The position numbers were made by a program, and so were the translations under genes. Below the pieces are notes generated by a model that was not told the origin of the DNA, ran no database searches, and saw only the letters and a program-made list of their open reading frames with translations. This document shows, one piece after another, positions 1 through 64,000 of a DNA stretch of 64,000 nt (position 1 is its first letter; each line of letters begins with the position of its first letter). This stretch comes from Auanema rhodensis (taxonomy: Eukaryota; Animalia; Nematoda). The DNA lies in assembly GCA_964057225.1 (NCBI GenBank), contig OZ059895.1, forward strand, positions 17,236,001-17,300,000, read 5' to 3'.

Positions 1-778
1 CTTGATTCTTTATACTCACAACTCAAGAATAATAAGATCAATGATATTTGACTGTCTATCAATGTTAAACTCTTAAGCCTACTTGCTTCCATTTGCAACA
101 CAGTCTCACGTGAGTCAGCGAAATTTCATTCATTTTTGTCTGCAGAGAAGCGAAAGATGGTTGTTCTTCTTTCAGACTTCATATTTCTCATTCAATTCTC
201 TTATCCATGCTTTCAAATTAATTTAAATGATTTATAAAATTTTATTTGGTTGACTATAAAATATGTCAAAGTTGAAGATTTGAAAAGAGCATTCATATTC
301 ACATCGTCCTTTCTTGTGATTTTAATTTTGCTAACCGAAAAGATTAAAATTTCTTGTACCGTTTACAATTCCAGCTTACAAGCTTCACATCCGCTTTTTC
401 TGTTTTATTTTCTTTTAAGGTAAGCTGAAAAATGTTTCATGTCATTACAAGTAGTATAACTTCTATTGCCAATCAGATTTTGATAAAGTTTTATCAATAT
501 GAGTTATGAAAACTTCATAAGTTCTTCTGAAAATTCTTTCTCTTATGTATTTTCTCAAACTTTGCTTCTGCATTATGAATTTCAACAAGCCTCATCTTCT
601 TGTATTTACTACGTTCGTAATTCAGCAAGCTTCTAATGTTACTAATTTTAGAAAATTGAAAGATATCCAATCAAGTTTTTTTTCATTCTTGGGAATTATG
701 TAAGTTCATTTTACTATAACTTATTGAGAATTCGTAACATTATTCAATATCATTAAGTAACTTTTGATCGTTGCAGAT

Positions 779-3700
779 ATGAATAGCAATTATTTCTGTC
801 ACAAAGCTTTTGATATGACTAACGATACTCATAATAATCAAAACAACAGGAATATCAGTATATCTAAGGCTGGCTCATTAAGTGTTGAAACAAATAATAT
901 GTCCAATCGACTTAACTCTGTTGCATCTTTTATAAAAACAATGTCACATGTAGATAATCCTGAAATCATTAATTCAGAGAATGATAATATAATGAGGCAA
1001 TCAGGTAACCTTCGTCATTCTTATAGTTGCATATCTTATCCAATTGCCTCAAATATCAATAACAACAGACAAATCCCAGATACCTCTTTAATCAACAAAC
1101 CATCTTTGCCATCCAGCAATGCCGTTCCTGTCATCCGAAACCTCAAATCAGCAGTATCCGCTGCCAGTTCAACAATCTACACTGCCAGACCCGCAGTCCA
1201 CAATTCCCTTCCCGTCGTTGAAAACTTCAAATCAGCAGTACCCGATGTCAACGACTCAGTCCACATTACTGGACCAGCAGCAGTACACAATGCCTTCCCC
1301 GTCGTCGAAAACTTCCAATCAGCAGTACCCGATGCCAGCTCAACTGCCCACATTACCAGACCAGCAACAGTCCACAATGCCCTTCCCGTCGTTGAAAACT
1401 TCAAATCAGCAGTACCCGATGTCAACGACTCAGTCCACAATGCCCTTCCTGTCGTCAAAAACCTCAAATCAAAAGTACCCGATGTCAACGACTCAGTCCA
1501 CATTACCGGACCAGCAGCAGTACACAATGCCTTCCCCGTCGTCGAAAACTTCCAATCAGCAGTACCCGATGCCAGCTCAAGAGTCTACATTTCTAGACCA
1601 GGAGTTCCCAATGCCGTTGCAGTCGCCGAAAACCTCACATCAGCAATACCTGATGCCAGCTCAACAACCCACAACTTCTCTCCCTTGCAATACGTCAAAT
1701 ATGCAGCACCCAATGCAAACCCTGCATTCTACAGAGCCAACTTTGCAGTTTCCAGTTCCAACCCTACAACCCAAAGACCCAATCCTTCACTCTCTAGATC
1801 CATCGTTACAGTCCCCAGTGTCAACCCCACAGCTCAAAACATCCAATCAGCAATGCCAAGTGAAAAGTCCACAGTCCACAGAACTGACCGAGAAGTTCAG
1901 AACTTCACACTTGCAATACCTGCAACCACTAGCATCAAAACAACAGCCGATAACGCCAAGCCTGCAGTCTACAGCACCAGTTCTACAATCAAAAATACCA
2001 ACTGTGGAGTCTATAATGCCAGCCCTTCAGTCAATAATGTCAATTCTGTGTTCTTCGACATCAATTCTGCAGTCCACAACCGTAAACCTTCAGACCACAA
2101 CGATAATTCTGCGTTCCACAGCAACAAATCTGCAGTCCGTAATGCCAGTGTTACGGACCGCAATGCCAGCACTTCAAGCCATAACGACAGTTCTACAGTC
2201 TACAAGAGTAATTATACAGTCCTCAATACCAGCACTCCAGTCGACAACGTCAATTCTGCAATCCACAATGCCAGCTCTGCACTCCATAACGTTAGTACTG
2301 CGGTCTACAACGACAATTCTACAGTCTTCAAGAATACCAACGCTGCAACCCGCAATACCAGTTCTACAGTCTCTGATACCAACTCTGCAGTCCACTATGT
2401 CAAAACTGCAGTCCATAATGCCGCTTCTACAGGCCACAACGTCAGATCTGCAATCCAGAACACCTTTCCTGCAGCCAACAGCGACAGTGCTAAAGGCTCC
2501 GACGTCAATTTTGCAGTCCACTATGTTAAAACTACAGTCCATAATGCCAACTCTGCAGTCCACAACGTTAAAACTGCAATCCACAACGTCAAATTTGGAG
2601 TCCACAAAGCTGATTCTGCAATCCACAGTCCCAGCTTTGAAGCCCAAAGTCCCGACTCTGAAACCAACCGTACCGTTGATAAAATCGCCACAACATTAAA
2701 TGAACAACTAATGCCTCAAGGCAAAGAGGGTTCTTCTGCAATGTGCTCTGATTCTAATGCACAGCTTCCGTTACATCAAATGCAGTTACAGCAACAACAT
2801 CTGCAACATTATCTTTATCAACCAAATGCTTTGCTGAAAAGCAATATGTTAGTTCAAAAAACTGATCGGACAAACGAAAAAGCTGTCAATATTCTAAACA
2901 CTTACTCTCATACACAAACCAAAACACAAACTCAACCAACTCAACCAACTCAACATCTACTCTTTAACATTGTCGAGGTTACATCATTATCATATAACTT
3001 ATATAAAGAAAAATATTTCAGCCCATCGCTCATCCTGTTGAAAAAAGCATTAGCCAAGTCCAGAGACCTATTCAACTTCCGAAAGAATACCCTACTCAAT
3101 TTAATTCATATACTCTTCAAAAAGAAAAGCAAAATCCCTTAGCTCATAAAATCTCAAAATATTCTCAAAATTTTACTAACCTACAAACCAGAAACGGTTC
3201 TTTCCCTTTTGTATTTCCTACGATTTCACCACAACAGCGAGGATACACCCAAAAAAAAAATTGTCGTGTCCCTGGACCAATCGACGCTCCTGCAAAAAAA
3301 ACGAGAAAACCAAGAAAAACGTAATGCTTTTTTCATTTCTTTTTTCTTACAAAAAGAGACTATATCGGAGAAAGAAATGCTGAAATGCCAGAAATTTCCT
3401 TTTCAATGTTTTACTTCGATTATTCAGATTTGCTGATGTAGGAGTTCAAACCGTTGCAGTATTAACTCCAGCATGCAAGAATTCACCAGTATATAAACCT
3501 TTACCAGTACAATCAGCCTTGGATTTGAGTGAGATAACATCTAGTAAAATATAAAATGTGTTTTTTCAGTTGTAAAAGAAGTTCAACACATAGGCATTAT
3601 ATTGATTCAGACAGAATTTGAAATAGAAAATCTGGAGAGCGCATATGCCGATGTACGAACAATTACTGTCGCAAACTACAAAATGTATTTCTTAAATTAT

Positions 3701-36400: not shown

Positions 36401-38164
36401 AAAAAACGAACGTAGGGTGAAGGGGGAGAAGGAGCGAGAGAGAGGCCTCCCCCCGTGTCTCGTCGCTCCACTACCACGCGACGCACACAATCGACCCACA
36501 CCGCCTGCCGTTTTTTTTTGCCCGCCTGCTCATAACTCGCCTCTGCTGCTGCTGTTGCTGCTACAGCTACTACAACTTTTTTTTCTTCTACTCCTCCCCT
36601 TTTCTCTCTGTTCCTTCTTTTTTCCTCTCTCTCGATCTATCTGTACAGACAGAGATAGAAACTCCATCTACCCTCCAACAACGAGCAGAGATAGAGAGAA
36701 AAAAGTTATTTCTCCCCCCCCCTCCCCCAGGCAGACAAGCCTGTTTGTCGCGTTCGATTAGTTTTGATTCGCTCTTCGTTCGTTCCTACGTTCGTGCGTT
36801 CGTACGTTCGAACGTTCGTGCGTTCATGCGTTCCGGCGTTCGTGTGATGATTTGTTCGCTTATAATCTTCTCGGATCGTTTGTTTCCTCTTTCCTATGTT
36901 TTTTAGCTTCCCAACCGTTGAATTTCATTCATACACTTCTTTTCTGCTGATTTTTTAATTGCTGAATGATCAGTTTAAAATTTGTAATATGAATCTTTAT
37001 GCCTTGAGCCTCATTTATCTGCTTTCCTGTCTACTGTAAACTATAATTTTTCTCTAAAACTGCCACTAATAATATTAATCGTTCATCTTATTTTTATTTC
37101 TTCATATCTCGTGTCCATATCAGGCTCATGGAAGCTTGCTTTTCTAAATTTTAACTAGAGTGTTTTTTTTTGCTTGTATGTTTATTGATTTCGTTTTCAT
37201 CATATTGATCAGCTTCTAAGATTCTTTTTCTTTATCAGCGCCCAAATGGAGGCCTCAATATCCGGATCCATTGATGACGATTTTGCTCCGGAACCGCGTG
37301 GCAGATGCTATACATGGCCTATGCAACAGTTTGTCTATGAGCCTCCGGGAACAAATCTAAATGACTCAAACTCTTCTGTCTGCCGGGAGCAGACTGTAGG
37401 TCAGCTTCTTCAAGCTACACCTTCTTCCTCCAATATGGGATCACATCTGATGCCATTGGGAGGAATTCCGATGGGCGCTGGCGCCCAAGGCCTACAAGCG
37501 CCAGCTAAGAAGAAACGCTGTCGCAAGAAGCCAGCTGATCAGTTGGCTCAGAAAAAACCAAATCCATGGGGCGAAGAGTCATACTCCGATATTATTGCCA
37601 AAGCACTAGAGTCAGCTCCTGAAGGTCGTCTGAAACTGAACGAGATCTATCAGTGGTTCTCAGACAATATTCCTTATTTCCGGGAGAGATCTAGCCAAGA
37701 AGAAGCTGCTGGTTGGAAGGTTTGTTGTTTAATTCATTTTCTTTTTTTTTCACTTTTTATCTGCTTTGAAAATGCTATTTATATTTCTTTTATTCATCCA
37801 CTTATTTCATGAATACTTTTCTCGCTTATATATATTATTTATTTATTTATTATAATATATATATATATATATATAAGCTACTCCGTCTTCCTTTTTGCAC
37901 TCAAATTGTGTTCAATCAGCTGAGCAACAGTTGCCATCTGTGCTTTTTGTGTGGCTGATTCTTTTCGACAAAAGATCTCACTTTCGGTGAAATTGCTACA
38001 AATCTAAGAAATCAAAACAAAAATTGGAGACCAAACGAAATTTTTTTTCGCAGGAAATACGTTTTCCCAACGTATATTTCTTTAATTATTCTAGCTATTA
38101 GAACTATTATGTGGCCAACTGCCTAATAGTCTCGTTTTTTCTTTTCATTATGTTGCTCCATATC

Positions 38165-60702: not shown

Positions 60703-61083
60703 ATGTATCTATCCAGATCCATTTAGGGACCGCTTAAATTGCCATGAAAGCCCTCAAAACATGAAGCGTATAGTAGAAAAAGTTCAACATTTCTAGACAA
60801 AACTTTATTTAAATATAGAACATATATCAAACATTTTAATTGAACCAGCTATTAAACTATGTATAAATTAATTATTATTCAATATCATTATCTATTACTC
60901 AAAGTACTTCAATGAAATAAAACTGTTACAAGTTAAGAGTTCAAAACAATTACCGATCTTTCTTCTCAGAGCTTTTACTTCAGGTTACATCTTCTCTCGA
61001 ATGAAATATTTCAATTCAATATGTACACGCAATGTTGAAAGTGACTAAGAGATTATAATCGACAAATGAAAATAAATTATCAA

Positions 61084-61155
61084 GCCTCATTGGCTCAGGG
61101 GCAGAGCGTCTGTCTAGTAAACAGAAGGTCGCTGGTTCGATTCCAGCATGAGGCA
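61084..61155 (+). tRNA. tRNA-Thr(AGT)
   Basis: 72 nt; acceptor GCCTCAT/ATGAGGC, D stem GCTC/GAGC, anticodon stem TCTGT/ACAGA with loop CT-AGT-AA, T arm GCTGG-TTCGATT-CCAGC; TTTT downstream. Confidence 0.95.
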
Positions 61156-61327
61156 TCGTTTTAGACTTTTTCAAACTATTTTGAGGATTAATTCGTGCTT
61201 CTTGAAGCTTTTACTTCAGGTTACATCTTCTCTTATTCATTCAAATGAAATATTTCTATTGAATATGTACACGCATTGTTGAAAGTGACTAAGAGATTAT
61301 TATGGACAAATGAAAATAACTTATCAA

Positions 61328-61382
61328 GCCTCATTGGCTCAGGGGCAGAGCGTCTGTCTAGTAAACATTCCAGCTTGAGGCA
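61328..61382 (+). pseudogene. tRNA-Thr(AGT)-derived 55-nt copy with 17-nt deletion
   Basis: Lacks agaaggtcgctggttcg (variable loop, 5' T arm, most of B box); catgagg>cttgagg. Confidence 0.85.
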
Positions 61383-61554
61383 TCTTTTTAGACTTTCTCA
61401 AACTATTTTGAGGTAAAATTCGTGCTTCTTGAAGCTTTTACTTCAGGTTACATCTTCTCTTATTCATTCAAATGAAATATTTCTATTGAATATGTACACG
61501 CATTGTTGAAATTGACTAAGAGATTATTATGGACAAATGAAAATAACTTATCAA

Positions 61555-61609
61555 GCCTCATTGGCTCAGGGGCAGAGCGTCTGTCTAGTAAACATTCCAG
61601 CTTGAGGCA
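61555..61609 (+). pseudogene. tRNA-Thr(AGT)-derived 55-nt deleted copy
   Basis: Same deletion and substitution. Confidence 0.85.
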
Positions 61610-61781
61610 TCTTTTTAGACTTTCTCAAACTATTTTGAGGTAAAATTCGTGCTTCTTGAAGCTTTTACTTCAGGTTACATCTTCTCTTATTCATTCAAAT
61701 GAAATCTTTATGTTCAATATGTACACGCATTGTTGAAAGTGACAAAGTGATTATAATCGAGAAATGAAAACAACTTATCAA

Positions 61782-61836
61782 GCCTCATTGGCTCAGGGGC
61801 AGAGCGTCTGTCTAGTAAACATTCCAGCTTGAGGCA
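61782..61836 (+). pseudogene. tRNA-Thr(AGT)-derived 55-nt deleted copy
   Basis: Same deletion and substitution. Confidence 0.85.
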
Positions 61837-62008
61837 TCTTTTTAGACTTTCTCAAACTATTTTGAGGTATAATTCGTGCTTCTTGAAGCTTTTACTTCAG
61901 GTTACATCTTCTCTTATTCATTCAAATGAAATCTTTATGTTCAATATGTACACGCATTGTTGAAAGTGACAAAGTGATTATAATCGAGAAATGAAAACAA
62001 CTTATCAA

Positions 62009-62063
62009 GCCTCATTGGCTCAGGGGCAGAGCGTCTGTCTAGTAAACATTCCAGCTTGAGGCA
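62009..62063 (+). pseudogene. tRNA-Thr(AGT)-derived 55-nt deleted copy
   Basis: Same deletion and substitution. Confidence 0.85.
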
Positions 62064-62235
62064 TCTTTTTAGACTTTCTCAAACTGTTTGGAGGATCCAT
62101 TTGTGCTTCTTGAAACTTTTGCTTCAGATTATATCTTCTCTTATTCATTCAAATGAAATATTTGAATTCAATATGTACACGCATTGTTGAAAGTGACAAA
62201 GATATTATAATCGACAAATGAAAACAACTTATCAA

Positions 62236-62290
62236 GCCTCATTGGCTCAGGGGCAGAGCGTCTGTCTAGTAAACATTCCAGCTTGAGGCA
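62236..62290 (+). pseudogene. tRNA-Thr(AGT)-derived 55-nt deleted copy
   Basis: Same deletion and substitution. Confidence 0.85.
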
Positions 62291-62462
62291 TCTTTTTAGA
62301 CTTTCTCAAACTATTTTGAGGATTAATTCGTTCTTCTTGAAACTTTTGCTTCAGATTATATCTTCTCTTATTCATTCAAATGAAATATTTGAATTCAATA
62401 TGTACACGCATTGTTGAAAGTGACAAAGTGATTATAATCGAGAAATGAAAACAACTTATCAA

Positions 62463-62517
62463 GCCTCATTGGCTCAGGGGCAGAGCGTCTGTCTAGTAAA
62501 CATTCCAGCTTGAGGCA
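62463..62517 (+). pseudogene. tRNA-Thr(AGT)-derived 55-nt deleted copy
   Basis: Same deletion and substitution. Confidence 0.85.
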
Positions 62518-62689
62518 TCTTTTTAGACTTTCTCAAACTGTTTGGAGGATCCATTTGTGCTTCTTGAAACTTTTGCTTCAGATTATATCTTCTCTTATTC
62601 ATTCAAATGAAATCTTTATGTTCAATATGTACACGCATTGTTGAAAGTGACAAAGTGATTATAATCGAGAAATGAAAACAACTTATCAA

Positions 62690-62744
62690 GCCTCATTGGC
62701 TCAGGGGCAGAGCGTCTGTCTAGTAAACATTCCAGCTTGAGGCA
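62690..62744 (+). pseudogene. tRNA-Thr(AGT)-derived 55-nt deleted copy
   Basis: Same deletion and substitution. Confidence 0.85.
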
Positions 62745-62916
62745 TCTTTTTAGACTTTCTCAAACTATTTTGAGGATTAATTCGTTCTTCTTGAAGCTTT
62801 TACTTCAGGTTACATCTTCTCTTATTCATTCGAATGAAATATTTGAATTCAATATGTACACGCATTGTTGAAAGTGACAAAGTGATTATAATCGAGAAAT
62901 GAAAATAACTTATCAA

Positions 62917-62971
62917 GCCTCATTGGCTCAGGGGCAGAGCGTCTGTCTAGTAAACATTCCAGCTTGAGGCA
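62917..62971 (+). pseudogene. tRNA-Thr(AGT)-derived 55-nt deleted copy
   Basis: Same deletion and substitution. Confidence 0.85.
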
Positions 62972-63143
62972 TCGTTTTAGACTTTTTCAAACTATTTTTA
63001 GGATTAATTCGTGCTTCTTGAAGCTTTTACTTCAGGTTACATCTTCTCTTATTCATTCAAATGAAATGTTTCTATTGAATATGTACACGCATTGTTGAAA
63101 GTGACAAAGTGATTATAATCGAGAAATGAAAATAACTTATCAA

Positions 63144-63198
63144 GCCTCATTGGCTCAGGGGCAGAGCGTCTGTCTAGTAAACATTCCAGCTTGAGGCA
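63144..63198 (+). pseudogene. tRNA-Thr(AGT)-derived 55-nt deleted copy
   Basis: Same deletion and substitution. Confidence 0.85.
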
Positions 63199-63370
63199 TC
63201 GTTTTAGACTTTTTCAAACTATTTTTAGGATTCATTCGTGCTTCTCGAAGCTTTTACTTCAGGTTACATCTTCTCTTATTCATTCGAATGAAATGTTTCA
63301 ATTGAATATGTACACGCATTGTTAAAAGTGACTAAGAGATTATAATCGAGAAATGAGAATAACTTATTAA

Positions 63371-63442
63371 GCCTCATTGGCTCAGGGGCAGAGCGTCTGT
63401 CTAGTAAACAGAAGGTCGCTGGTTCGATTCCAGCATGAGGCA
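63371..63442 (+). tRNA. tRNA-Thr(AGT)
   Basis: Identical to 61084-61155; full cloverleaf, B box GGTTCGATTCC, T-run terminator. Confidence 0.95.
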
Positions 63443-63614
63443 TCGTTTTAGACTTTTTCAAACTATTTTGAGGGTTAATTCGTGCTTCTTGAAGCTTTTA
63501 CTTCAGGTTACATCTTCTCTTATTCATTCAAATGAAATATTTGAATTCAATATGTACAGGTATCCTTGAAAGTGGCGCAGAGATTATAATCGAGAAATGA
63601 AAACAATTTATCAA

Positions 63615-63686
63615 GCCTCATTGGCTCAGGGGCAGAGCGTCTGTCTAGTAAACAGAAGGTCGCTGGTTCGATTCCAGCATGAGGCA
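63615..63686 (+). tRNA. tRNA-Thr(AGT)
   Basis: Identical full cloverleaf; TTTTT terminator. Confidence 0.95.
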
Positions 63687-63858
63687 TCTTTTTAGACTTT
63701 CTCAAACTATTTTTAGGATTCATTCGTGCTTCTTGAAGCTTTTACTTCAGGTTACATCTTCTCTTATTCATTCAAATGAAATGTTTCAATTGAATATGTA
63801 CACGTATCCTTGAAAGTGGTGCAGCGATTATAATCGAGAAATGAAAACAATTTATCAA

Positions 63859-63930
63859 GCCTCATTGGCTCAGGGGCAGAGCGTCTGTCTAGTAAACAGA
63901 AGGTCGCTGGTTCGATTCCAGCATGAGGCA
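63859..63930 (+). tRNA. tRNA-Thr(AGT)
   Basis: Identical full cloverleaf; TTTTT terminator. Confidence 0.95.
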
Positions 63931-64000
63931 TCTTTTTAGACTTTCTCAAACTATTTTGAGGTATAATTCGTGCTTCTTGAAGCTTTTACTTCAGGTTACA

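What the first reader, a model, noticed from the sequence alone, without database searches (positions are those of the whole stretch)
61328..63198. Amplified 55-nt T-armless tRNA-Thr copies embedded in a nuclear tRNA tandem array
Seen: nine consecutive units carry an identical 17-nt deletion plus one A>T change, flanked by intact genes on both sides. The 55-mers appear identical to each other while the spacers differ at many sites. They keep the acceptor stem (6/7 bp), D arm, AGT anticodon loop with 3 of 5 stem pairs, and a 5-nt CCAGC connector. Known: this size and topology match nematode mitochondrial tRNAs with a TV-replacement loop; loss of the B box normally abolishes Pol III initiation. 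Inference: either a tRNA gene caught turning into satellite DNA, or a selected tRNA-like RNA/DNA element (for example made by read-through from the intact first copy, which has only T4 directly downstream). Invariance of the deleted body relative to spacers is the hint of constraint.
Basis: partly seen in the sequence, partly recalled or inferred. Interest (0 to 1): 0.75.

Follow-up and report, generated by a model that had tools for sequence, protein, structure and literature searches.

The report
Broken tRNA copies inside tRNA satellite
The nine shortened threonine-tRNA copies are real, but they are one local run of a promoter-less pseudogene variant that has spread through a huge (~600-unit, ~200-kb) tandem array of one tRNA gene. 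Their sameness reflects recent copying, not selection for a new small RNA.

Summary
Observation confirmed. From window 61084 there is one intact 244-bp unit holding a 72-nt tRNA-Thr(AGT). Nine 227-bp units follow, each with an identical 55-nt body (17-nt deletion plus A>T), then three intact units.

The block is a small part of a ~200-kb cluster of arrays on the same chromosome. Exact junction counts genome-wide:
- 365 intact
- 99 with the 17-nt deletion (d17)
- 143 with a second, independent 19-nt deletion (d19) that also removes the B box and leaves no anticodon stem

The A>T change is not part of the deletion: 62 d17 copies have T, 36 A and 1 G. It breaks an acceptor pair.

The "invariant body versus variable spacer" contrast is not evidence of constraint:
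- 31 of 33 variable spacer columns in the block carry only alleles also seen in units outside it.
- Only about 2 new mutations exist in 1548 spacer bases, so about 0.6 are expected in the 495 body bases.
- Singleton rates are equal in bodies and spacers.
- Deleted bodies are about 5 times more diverged from the intact consensus than intact bodies.

The 55-mer is not predicted to fold as a T-armless tRNA and fails Rfam and ARAGORN, including its mitochondrial mode.

Verdict: pseudogene repeat variants spread by unequal crossover and gene conversion. Neighbouring windows of this scan noted the same array.

The parts
60962..61083 (+). Array edge: partial spacer (3' ~122 nt of a unit) where the tandem array begins
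   Evidence: matches unit positions 115-244 at 86%. The alignment shows homology starting inside the spacer.
61084..61155 (+). Intact tRNA-Thr(AGT) gene, 72 nt, with A box and perfect B box, followed by T4
   Evidence: ARAGORN; Rfam tRNA, 69.2 bits.
61328..63198 (+). Block of nine 227-bp units, each a 55-nt d17 body (B box deleted, A>T at the 7-66 pair) plus a 172-nt spacer. Bodies lie at 61328-61382, 61555-61609, 61782-61836, 62009-62063, 62236-62290, 62463-62517, 62690-62744, 62917-62971 and 63144-63198.
   Evidence: Rfam tRNA 20.6 bits, below the 29-bit gathering score. Not called by ARAGORN in standard or -mt mode.
63371..63442 (+). Intact tRNA-Thr(AGT) gene
63615..63686 (+). Intact tRNA-Thr(AGT) gene
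63859..63930 (+). Intact tRNA-Thr(AGT) gene
60962..64000 (+). Window part of the tandem array. It continues beyond the window to G000:C3:17302832, where a retroelement interrupts it, and further arrays run to about 17.492 Mb.

Best explanation
The nine 55-nt bodies are inactive pseudogene copies of a nuclear tRNA-Thr(AGT) gene. They sit in a satellite-like mega-array of that gene: about 600 units of 244, 227 or 225 bp, spread over about 200 kb of one chromosome with transposon interruptions.

A single 17-nt deletion removed most of the internal B-box promoter, the T arm and part of the anticodon stem. That allele (d17) then spread through the array by the ordinary turnover of tandem repeats: unequal crossover, multi-unit and segmental duplication, and short-tract gene conversion. 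A later A>T substitution arose on it and also spread. The block in the window is the longest local run of the d17-T sub-variant.

The bodies in the block are identical because they share a very recent common origin, and because the tRNA segment is nearly invariant in all unit classes. The spacers differ because they carry old polymorphisms that recombination has reshuffled among units.

Shown here: the anatomy, the copy numbers, the shared polymorphism, the recombination signal, the lack of a tRNA-like fold or score, and the higher divergence of deleted bodies. Inferred: transcriptional silence (from B-box loss) and neutrality.
For: Copy numbers, from exact junction patterns in the whole genome:
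- d17: 98 with the 19-mer. With a shorter junction pattern, 62 carry T, 36 carry A and 1 carries G.
- d19: 143.
- Intact: 365.
- All deleted copies lie in C3:17.297-17.492 Mb.

Sampled units: 99 units from five arrays gave 46 intact, 19 d17, 31 d19 and 3 of other lengths. The d17 body has 4 haplotypes. T at that site also occurs in one intact and four d19 units.

Nine-unit block:
- 33 variable spacer columns; 31 have all alleles present in units outside the block.
- Only 2 private alleles, so about 0.6 new mutations are expected in the 9 x 55 body bases, giving P(0) of about 0.5.

Singleton rates, body versus spacer, none significantly different:
- Intact: 0.0012 versus 0.0015
- d17: 0.0010 versus 0.0006
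- d19: 0.0012 versus 0.0002

Recombination:
- 86 of 231 informative site pairs in the block show all four gametes.
- d17 spacers can be 0-2 differences from intact-unit spacers, yet up to 30 of 172 from other d17 spacers.
- No spacer site is diagnostic of d17 or d19; maximum r2 is 0.54.

Body divergence from the intact consensus per site is 0.0030 for intact, 0.0144 for d17 and 0.0164 for d19.

Multi-unit duplications:
- The d17 pattern at 17300138, 17300609, 17301080 and 17301307 recurs exactly 6032 bp downstream.
- Alternating T/A dimers at 17340127 onward recur 3739 bp downstream.

A retroelement integrase ORF interrupts the array inside a spacer.

No sign of a tRNA-like product:
- Rfam tRNA score 20.6, below the 29-bit cut-off.
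- ARAGORN standard and -mt modes are silent on the 55-mers.
- The MFE fold is not a cloverleaf (z -1.48). The proposed T-armless fold is 6.6 kcal/mol worse, with Boltzmann probability 4e-6.
- Three or four runs of four or more T in every spacer.

Precedent: the Arabidopsis tRNA array evolves by unequal crossover and tolerates pseudogenes (PMC2886086).
Against: - No expression data could be consulted, so silence is inferred only from loss of the B box.
- A TATA-like hexamer lies at about -30 upstream of most units (read from the sequence). In principle it could recruit TFIIIB without TFIIIC.
- Nucleotide diversity in d17 bodies is about ten times lower than in their spacers, the same ratio as for intact genes. 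I attribute this to shared old spacer polymorphism, but a contribution from constraint or biased conversion cannot be excluded with 19 sampled copies.
- Both common deletion alleles remove the B box and no common spacer indel exists. This may mean the spread was not strictly neutral.
- Copies are not independent, so the Fisher tests are descriptive.
Confidence: 0.85

Rival explanations
1. The 55-mer is a selected, expressed T-armless tRNA-like RNA. It would be made from its own A box plus the upstream TATA-like element, or by read-through from an intact neighbour.
For: - The A box (10 of 11 consensus positions), D arm, anticodon loop and 6 of 7 acceptor pairs are retained, and a T5 or T4 run follows directly.
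- A TATA-like hexamer lies at about -30.
- Body diversity in d17 is low relative to spacers.
Against: - The B box is deleted.
- Rfam score 20.6, below 29. ARAGORN -mt, which is built to find TV-loop tRNAs, does not call it. It appears only among 88 noise calls at an 80% threshold.
- The proposed fold has Boltzmann probability 4e-6, and the anticodon stem has only 3 bp.
- The majority d17 sub-variant carries a derived change that breaks an acceptor pair.
- The d19 variant has no anticodon stem yet amplified to 143 copies by the same process.
- New-mutation rates are equal in body and spacer.
- Read-through must pass T4, T5, T4, T4, and eight of the nine units have a promoter-less unit upstream.
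Confidence: 0.03
2. The deleted units are non-coding, but their spread was favoured rather than neutral. B-box-less units would lower the TFIIIC and Pol III load, excess tRNA-Thr output, or replication-transcription conflict in a mega-array, so arrays rich in silent units are tolerated or expand more easily. Alternatively, the transcribed body is a deletion hotspot.
For: - The only two common indel alleles among about 600 units both remove the B box. Together they make up about 40% of units.
- No common spacer indel was seen in 99 sampled units, although spacers are 70% of the unit.
- For two random deletions of about 18 nt, the chance that both hit the 11-nt B box is roughly (28/244)^2, about 0.013. 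This is my own estimate.
Against: - There are only two events, and the test was chosen after seeing the data.
- Drift in tandem arrays routinely carries variants to high frequency.
- The distant array at C3:12.64 Mb is entirely intact.
- No expression or fitness data are available.
Confidence: 0.1
3. The nine-unit run is an assembly artefact: a mis-expanded or mis-collapsed repeat.
For: Tandem arrays of about 230 bp are hard to assemble, and no reads were available to check copy number.
Against: - The nine units are distinguishable by 33 spacer sites in a non-periodic mosaic.
- The same junction occurs at 99 places in many different spacer contexts.
- The assembly is highly contiguous: 181 Mb in 112 contigs, and this contig is 24 Mb.
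Confidence: 0.03

Closest known systems
Arabidopsis thaliana chromosome 1 tRNA Ser-Tyr-Tyr tandem array (PMC2886086)
   Same: A nuclear tRNA gene array that evolves in concert by unequal crossover. It contains non-functional copies tolerated because of redundancy, and copy number is not tied to codon demand.
   Different: That array has a 1.5-kb unit with three genes and 27 units. Here the unit is a single gene of 244 bp, there are about 600 units, and two internal-promoter deletion alleles make up about 40% of them.
Entamoeba tRNA gene arrays (PMC2652664) and clustered tRNA genes and pseudogenes in animals (PMC2888827)
   Same: tRNA genes organised as long, satellite-like tandem repeats. tRNA pseudogenes are common in clusters and turn over fast.
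   Different: In Entamoeba the arrays hold nearly all tRNA genes and are the functional set. Here a single isoacceptor is amplified, with many dead units and transposon insertions.
T-armless (TV-replacement-loop) mitochondrial tRNAs of nematodes and other animals (PMC11571959, title and abstract seen; the specifics are from my own knowledge)
   Same: Size of about 55 nt, no T arm, and a retained acceptor stem and D arm.
   Different: Those tRNAs are mitochondrially encoded, keep a 5-bp anticodon stem and work with dedicated elongation factors. The 55-mer here is nuclear, keeps 3 of 5 anticodon-stem pairs, has a mismatched acceptor pair, has lost its promoter and is not recognised by ARAGORN -mt.
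Satellite DNA with higher-order repeats, and rDNA arrays carrying defective units
   Same: Head-to-tail units, variant monomers spread in runs and in multi-unit blocks, mosaic sharing of variants and TE insertions.
   Different: The monomer here is a recognisable Pol III gene that is still intact in about 60% of units. Chromatin state and chromosomal role are unknown.

Membership tests
Functional nuclear tRNA gene (Pol III type 2 promoter) | A box at positions 8-19 | tested here: met
   The A box is retained in the 55-mer. It matches 10 of 11 positions of the consensus TRGCNNAGTGG (sequence; consensus from established knowledge).
Functional nuclear tRNA gene (Pol III type 2 promoter) | B box (GGTTCGANTCC) at positions 52-62 | tested here: not met
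   It is perfect in intact units. Only TTCC remains in d17 and CGATTCC in d19.
Functional nuclear tRNA gene (Pol III type 2 promoter) | Cloverleaf recognised by covariance or heuristic models | tested here: not met
   Rfam RF00005 gives 20.6 bits against a gathering score of 29, while intact copies score 69.2. ARAGORN makes no call.
Functional nuclear tRNA gene (Pol III type 2 promoter) | Oligo-T terminator just downstream | tested here: met
   T5 follows seven of the nine units and T4 follows two.
T-armless (TV-replacement-loop) tRNA | 7-bp acceptor stem, D arm, 5-bp anticodon stem and a 6-12 nt replacement loop | tested here: not met
   The acceptor stem has 6 of 7 pairs (the A>T change breaks pair 7-66). 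The D arm is present. The anticodon stem has only 3 of 5 pairs. The connector is 7 nt.
T-armless (TV-replacement-loop) tRNA | Detected by a search tool designed for such tRNAs | tested here: not met
   ARAGORN -mt at its default threshold finds only the four intact genes. At -ps80 it makes 88 calls in 3 kb, which is noise.
T-armless (TV-replacement-loop) tRNA | The proposed fold is thermodynamically favoured | tested here: not met
   The proposed fold is -12.5 kcal/mol against an MFE of -19.1, giving Boltzmann probability 4e-6. The MFE z-score is -1.48. Caveat: real mitochondrial tRNAs are also poorly predicted.
T-armless (TV-replacement-loop) tRNA | Expressed, CCA-tailed and aminoacylated | not testable with these tools
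   No RNA data are available.
Satellite-like tandem array evolving in concert | Many head-to-tail units in one orientation | tested here: met
   About 600 junction matches, almost all on the + strand of C3. TRF period 227/244.
Satellite-like tandem array evolving in concert | Variants spread across units, mosaic sharing and multi-unit duplications | tested here: met
   Offsets of 6032 bp and 3739 bp recur in the junction maps.
Satellite-like tandem array evolving in concert | Heterochromatic or silenced state | not testable with these tools
   There are no chromatin data. The retroelement insertion in the array is only suggestive.
tRNA pseudogene | Derived from a tRNA gene, carries a disabling lesion and shows relaxed sequence conservation | tested here: met
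   The body is identical to the intact gene outside the deletion. The B box and T arm are lost. Divergence from the intact consensus is 0.0144 (d17) and 0.0164 (d19) per site against 0.0030 for intact (copies are not independent).

The most novel reading that the evidence does not exclude
The d17 units are transcribed without TFIIIC, through the retained A box and the TATA-like element at about -30. The product would be a nuclear-encoded 55-nt T-armless tRNA-Thr-like RNA with some role, for example as a decoy, a tRNA-fragment-like regulator or a primer. The evidence here makes this unlikely but cannot exclude it without RNA data.
Probability: 0.03. Interest if true: 0.8.

Novelty: new member of a known kind. 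Interest (0 to 1): 0.28.

Why it matters
As a candidate new RNA class it does not hold up. The finding is an ordinary consequence of tandem-repeat turnover acting on a redundant Pol III gene.

It still has modest value as a clean natural example. One tRNA gene has been amplified to about 600 units, and two independent promoter-killing deletions have reached about 40% frequency. That makes it a tractable system for three questions:
- How a gene array decays into satellite DNA.
- How gene conversion moves a deletion among spacer backgrounds.
- Whether silent units are favoured in Pol III mega-arrays.

It is also a caution for tRNA gene counts in this genome. About 240 of the roughly 600 tRNA-Thr(AGT)-like units are dead.

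Tried and rejected
Unit-level statistics therefore rest on 99 units from six fetched stretches (L031-L036) plus exact-pattern counts.
The organism is known only as an animal, from a Forkhead-domain exon. Other readers' notes hint at a nematode; I did not test that.
- Literature searches for tRNA-derived satellites and for nematode tRNA-Thr arrays gave only general precedents. One call failed on a five-word term.
- A metagenome scan for the d17 junction was blank, which says little.
- ARAGORN at a relaxed threshold calls some 55-mers, but among 88 spurious calls in 3 kb. I rejected this as noise.
- The third sequence was mis-placed and is not a d19 body. The d19 body was refolded.
- Coding potential was rejected. 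No ORF exceeds 61 aa on either strand, and 227 bp is not a multiple of 3.
- The Rfam Plastid-ycf2 hits on the minus strand (27.5 bits against a cut-off of 65.7) are the reverse complement of the tRNA and are spurious.
- A spacer tree with class labels was considered and dropped, because pervasive recombination makes a single tree meaningless.

Full report
**What is in the window**

From 61084 to the window end there are 13 head-to-tail units on the + strand. The array begins inside a spacer at about 60962.

- Unit 1 (61084) is 244 bp: a 72-nt tRNA-Thr(AGT) plus a 172-nt spacer.
- Units 2-10 (61328-63370) are 227 bp, each with an identical 55-nt body.
- Units 11-13 are intact again.

ARAGORN and Rfam recognise only the four intact genes (69.2 bits). 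The 55-mers score 20.6 bits, below the 29-bit gathering score.

The deletion removes 17 nt: the last two bases of the anticodon stem's 3' strand, the variable loop, the 5' T-stem strand and five bases of the T loop. Of the B box (perfect GGTTCGATTCC in intact units) only TTCC remains. The A>T change turns the 7-66 acceptor pair into a U-U mismatch. The one anatomical correction is that the unpaired connector is 7 nt, not 5.

**The wider context changes the picture**

The window is G000:C3:17236001-17300000, in a 181-Mb, 112-contig animal genome (Forkhead exon). The array runs on past the window to 17302832. Related arrays fill much of C3 up to about 17.492 Mb, and an all-intact array sits at 12.64 Mb.

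Exact junction searches over the whole genome give these counts:

| Class | Copies |
|---|---|
| Intact | 365 |
| d17 (19-mer junction) | 98 |
| d17 (shorter junction): T / A / G at the 66 site | 62 / 36 / 1 |
| d19 | 143 |

The d19 allele is a second, independent deletion of 19 nt (225-bp unit, 53-nt body). It removes the 3' part of the anticodon loop, the whole 3' strand of the anticodon stem, the variable loop, the 5' T-stem strand and the first two T-loop bases.

Roughly 40% of about 600 units are therefore B-box-less. The nine-unit block is simply the longest homogeneous run; runs of 2-6 occur elsewhere.

The A>T is not part of the deletion. 36 d17 copies keep the ancestral A, and T also occurs in one intact and four d19 units among those sampled.

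**Is the body constrained relative to the spacers?**

I cut 99 units out of six fetched stretches: 46 intact, 19 d17, 31 d19 and 3 irregular.

| Class | Body pi | Spacer pi |
|---|---|---|
| Intact | 0.006 | 0.079 |
| d17 | 0.011 | 0.105 |
| d19 | 0.029 | 0.050 |

But the spacer diversity is old.

- In the nine-unit block, 33 spacer columns vary. In 31 of them every allele is also present in units outside the block, mostly intact ones. Only two alleles are private, each in two units.
- Two new events in 9 x 172 bases predict about 0.6 events in 9 x 55 bases. Zero observed has a probability of about 0.5.
- Across all sampled units, singleton variants are equally rare in bodies and spacers in every class, at about 0.001 per site with no significant difference.

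Recombination is pervasive.

- 86 of 231 informative site pairs within the block show all four gametes.
- d17 spacers can be identical to intact-unit spacers, yet differ at up to 30 of 172 sites from other d17 spacers.
- No spacer site is diagnostic of d17 or d19; maximum r2 is 0.54.

So the deletion allele has been moved among old spacer backgrounds, or the spacers have been exchanged around it. Spacer differences are not a clock for time since the deletion.

Measured against the intact consensus, deleted bodies carry about five times more substitutions per site than intact bodies: 0.0144 and 0.0164 against 0.0030. This is descriptive, because copies are not independent. The commonest change breaks a stem pair.

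**Could the 55-mer be a T-armless tRNA?**

- ViennaRNA's MFE (-19.1 kcal/mol, z -1.48) is not a cloverleaf. It pairs the D region with the anticodon-stem strand.
- ARAGORN in metazoan-mitochondrial mode, which is designed to find TV-loop tRNAs, calls only the intact genes. The 55-mers surface only at a threshold that yields 88 calls in 3 kb.
- The anticodon stem keeps 3 of 5 pairs.
- The d19 variant cannot form an anticodon stem at all, yet it amplified to more copies than d17. Amplification therefore does not depend on tRNA-like topology.

**Could it be transcribed?**

By established knowledge of type 2 Pol III promoters, loss of the B box abolishes TFIIIC binding.

Read-through from the intact first copy would have to pass T4 (+4), T5 (+12), T4 (+24) and T4 (+54). 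Every spacer has three or four such runs. Eight of the nine units also lie behind another promoter-less unit.

One door is left open. A TATA-like hexamer sits at about -30 in most units (sequence). In some systems such an element can recruit TFIIIB directly. I could not test this.

**Array dynamics**

- The d17 positions at 17300138, 17300609, 17301080 and 17301307 recur exactly 6032 bp downstream. That duplication spans a retroelement insertion.
- T/A-alternating 452-bp dimers recur 3739 bp apart.
- The stretch that includes the window ends inside a spacer. A 487-aa ORF with Integrase_H2C2 and DUF5641 domains follows.
- A 359-bp irregular unit is a join of unit positions 1-131 to 17-244.

All of this is the signature of unequal exchange and segmental duplication in a satellite-like array. 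The Arabidopsis tRNA Ser-Tyr-Tyr array is a published precedent. It evolves by unequal crossover and carries pseudogenes tolerated through redundancy (PMC2886086). Clustered tRNA genes and pseudogenes with fast turnover are widespread (PMC2888827).

**What remains unexplained**

The only two common indel alleles both remove the B box, and no common spacer indel was seen, although spacers are 70% of the unit. With two events this is only a hint, roughly 1% by a post hoc estimate. It could reflect a deletion hotspot in the transcribed body or an advantage of silent units in a Pol III mega-array. I list this as a rival or add-on at about 10%.

**Limits**

- No eukaryotic comparative collection or RNA data were available, so cross-species conservation and expression are untested.
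- A metagenome scan for the junction was blank, which is uninformative.
- Other first-stage notes on adjacent windows of the same genome describe the same array with two deletion alleles, and a retroelement at the array's end. I reached the two-allele result independently before seeing them.

**Verdict**

Its satellite-in-the-making reading is right and its selected-RNA reading is not supported. This is a new example of a known kind of thing: a tandem tRNA gene array carrying pseudogene variants that evolve in concert. Interest is about 0.28.

Noticed in passing
G000:C3:17302015 onward; sampled in L031, L033-L036: A second, independent 19-nt deletion allele of the same tRNA-Thr(AGT) unit (225-bp unit, 53-nt body, no anticodon stem, B box reduced to CGATTCC). 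It has 143 exact junction copies, more than the 17-nt allele. Both common indels of the array remove the B box.
   Followed up: partly
L031:6827-8290 (G000:C3:17302827-17304290), just beyond the window: The array stretch ends inside a spacer. A 487-aa ORF with Integrase_H2C2 and DUF5641 domains follows, so a retroelement is inserted in the array. The d17 pattern before it recurs 6032 bp downstream, so the insertion was later duplicated along with array units.
   Followed up: partly
G000:C3:12640740-12643151 (L032): A separate array of at least nine all-intact 244-bp tRNA-Thr(AGT) units lies 4.6 Mb away on the same chromosome, with spacers 93-97% identical to the window's unit. Single intact-junction matches also lie at C1:15522009 (-) and C3:15281697 (+).
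   Followed up: no
window 37246-37812 (+): An ORF fragment with a Forkhead domain (Pfam E 3e-10). Atlas neighbours are FOXO- and FOXK-like. It marks the genome as an animal's.
   Followed up: no
window 764-3142 (+): A 792-aa open frame with only weak low-complexity Pfam matches (ApoLp-III and KRTDAP, both below cut-off). Its nature is unknown.
   Followed up: no
spacer positions about -30 to -25 upstream of each tRNA body (e.g. window 61754-61759): A TATA-like hexamer (TATAAT, or TATTAT in two units) lies at the position where TATA elements act in some Pol III genes. It could matter for whether B-box-less units are completely silent.
   Followed up: no
other windows of this genome (notes s1-373310, s1-397604, s1-419021): Other readers report a mega-array of more than 100 tRNA-Thr(TGT) genes about 618 kb downstream, and giant Thr/Ser-rich mucin-like genes elsewhere. 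A link between Thr-tRNA gene amplification and Thr codon demand is an untested idea.
   Followed up: no
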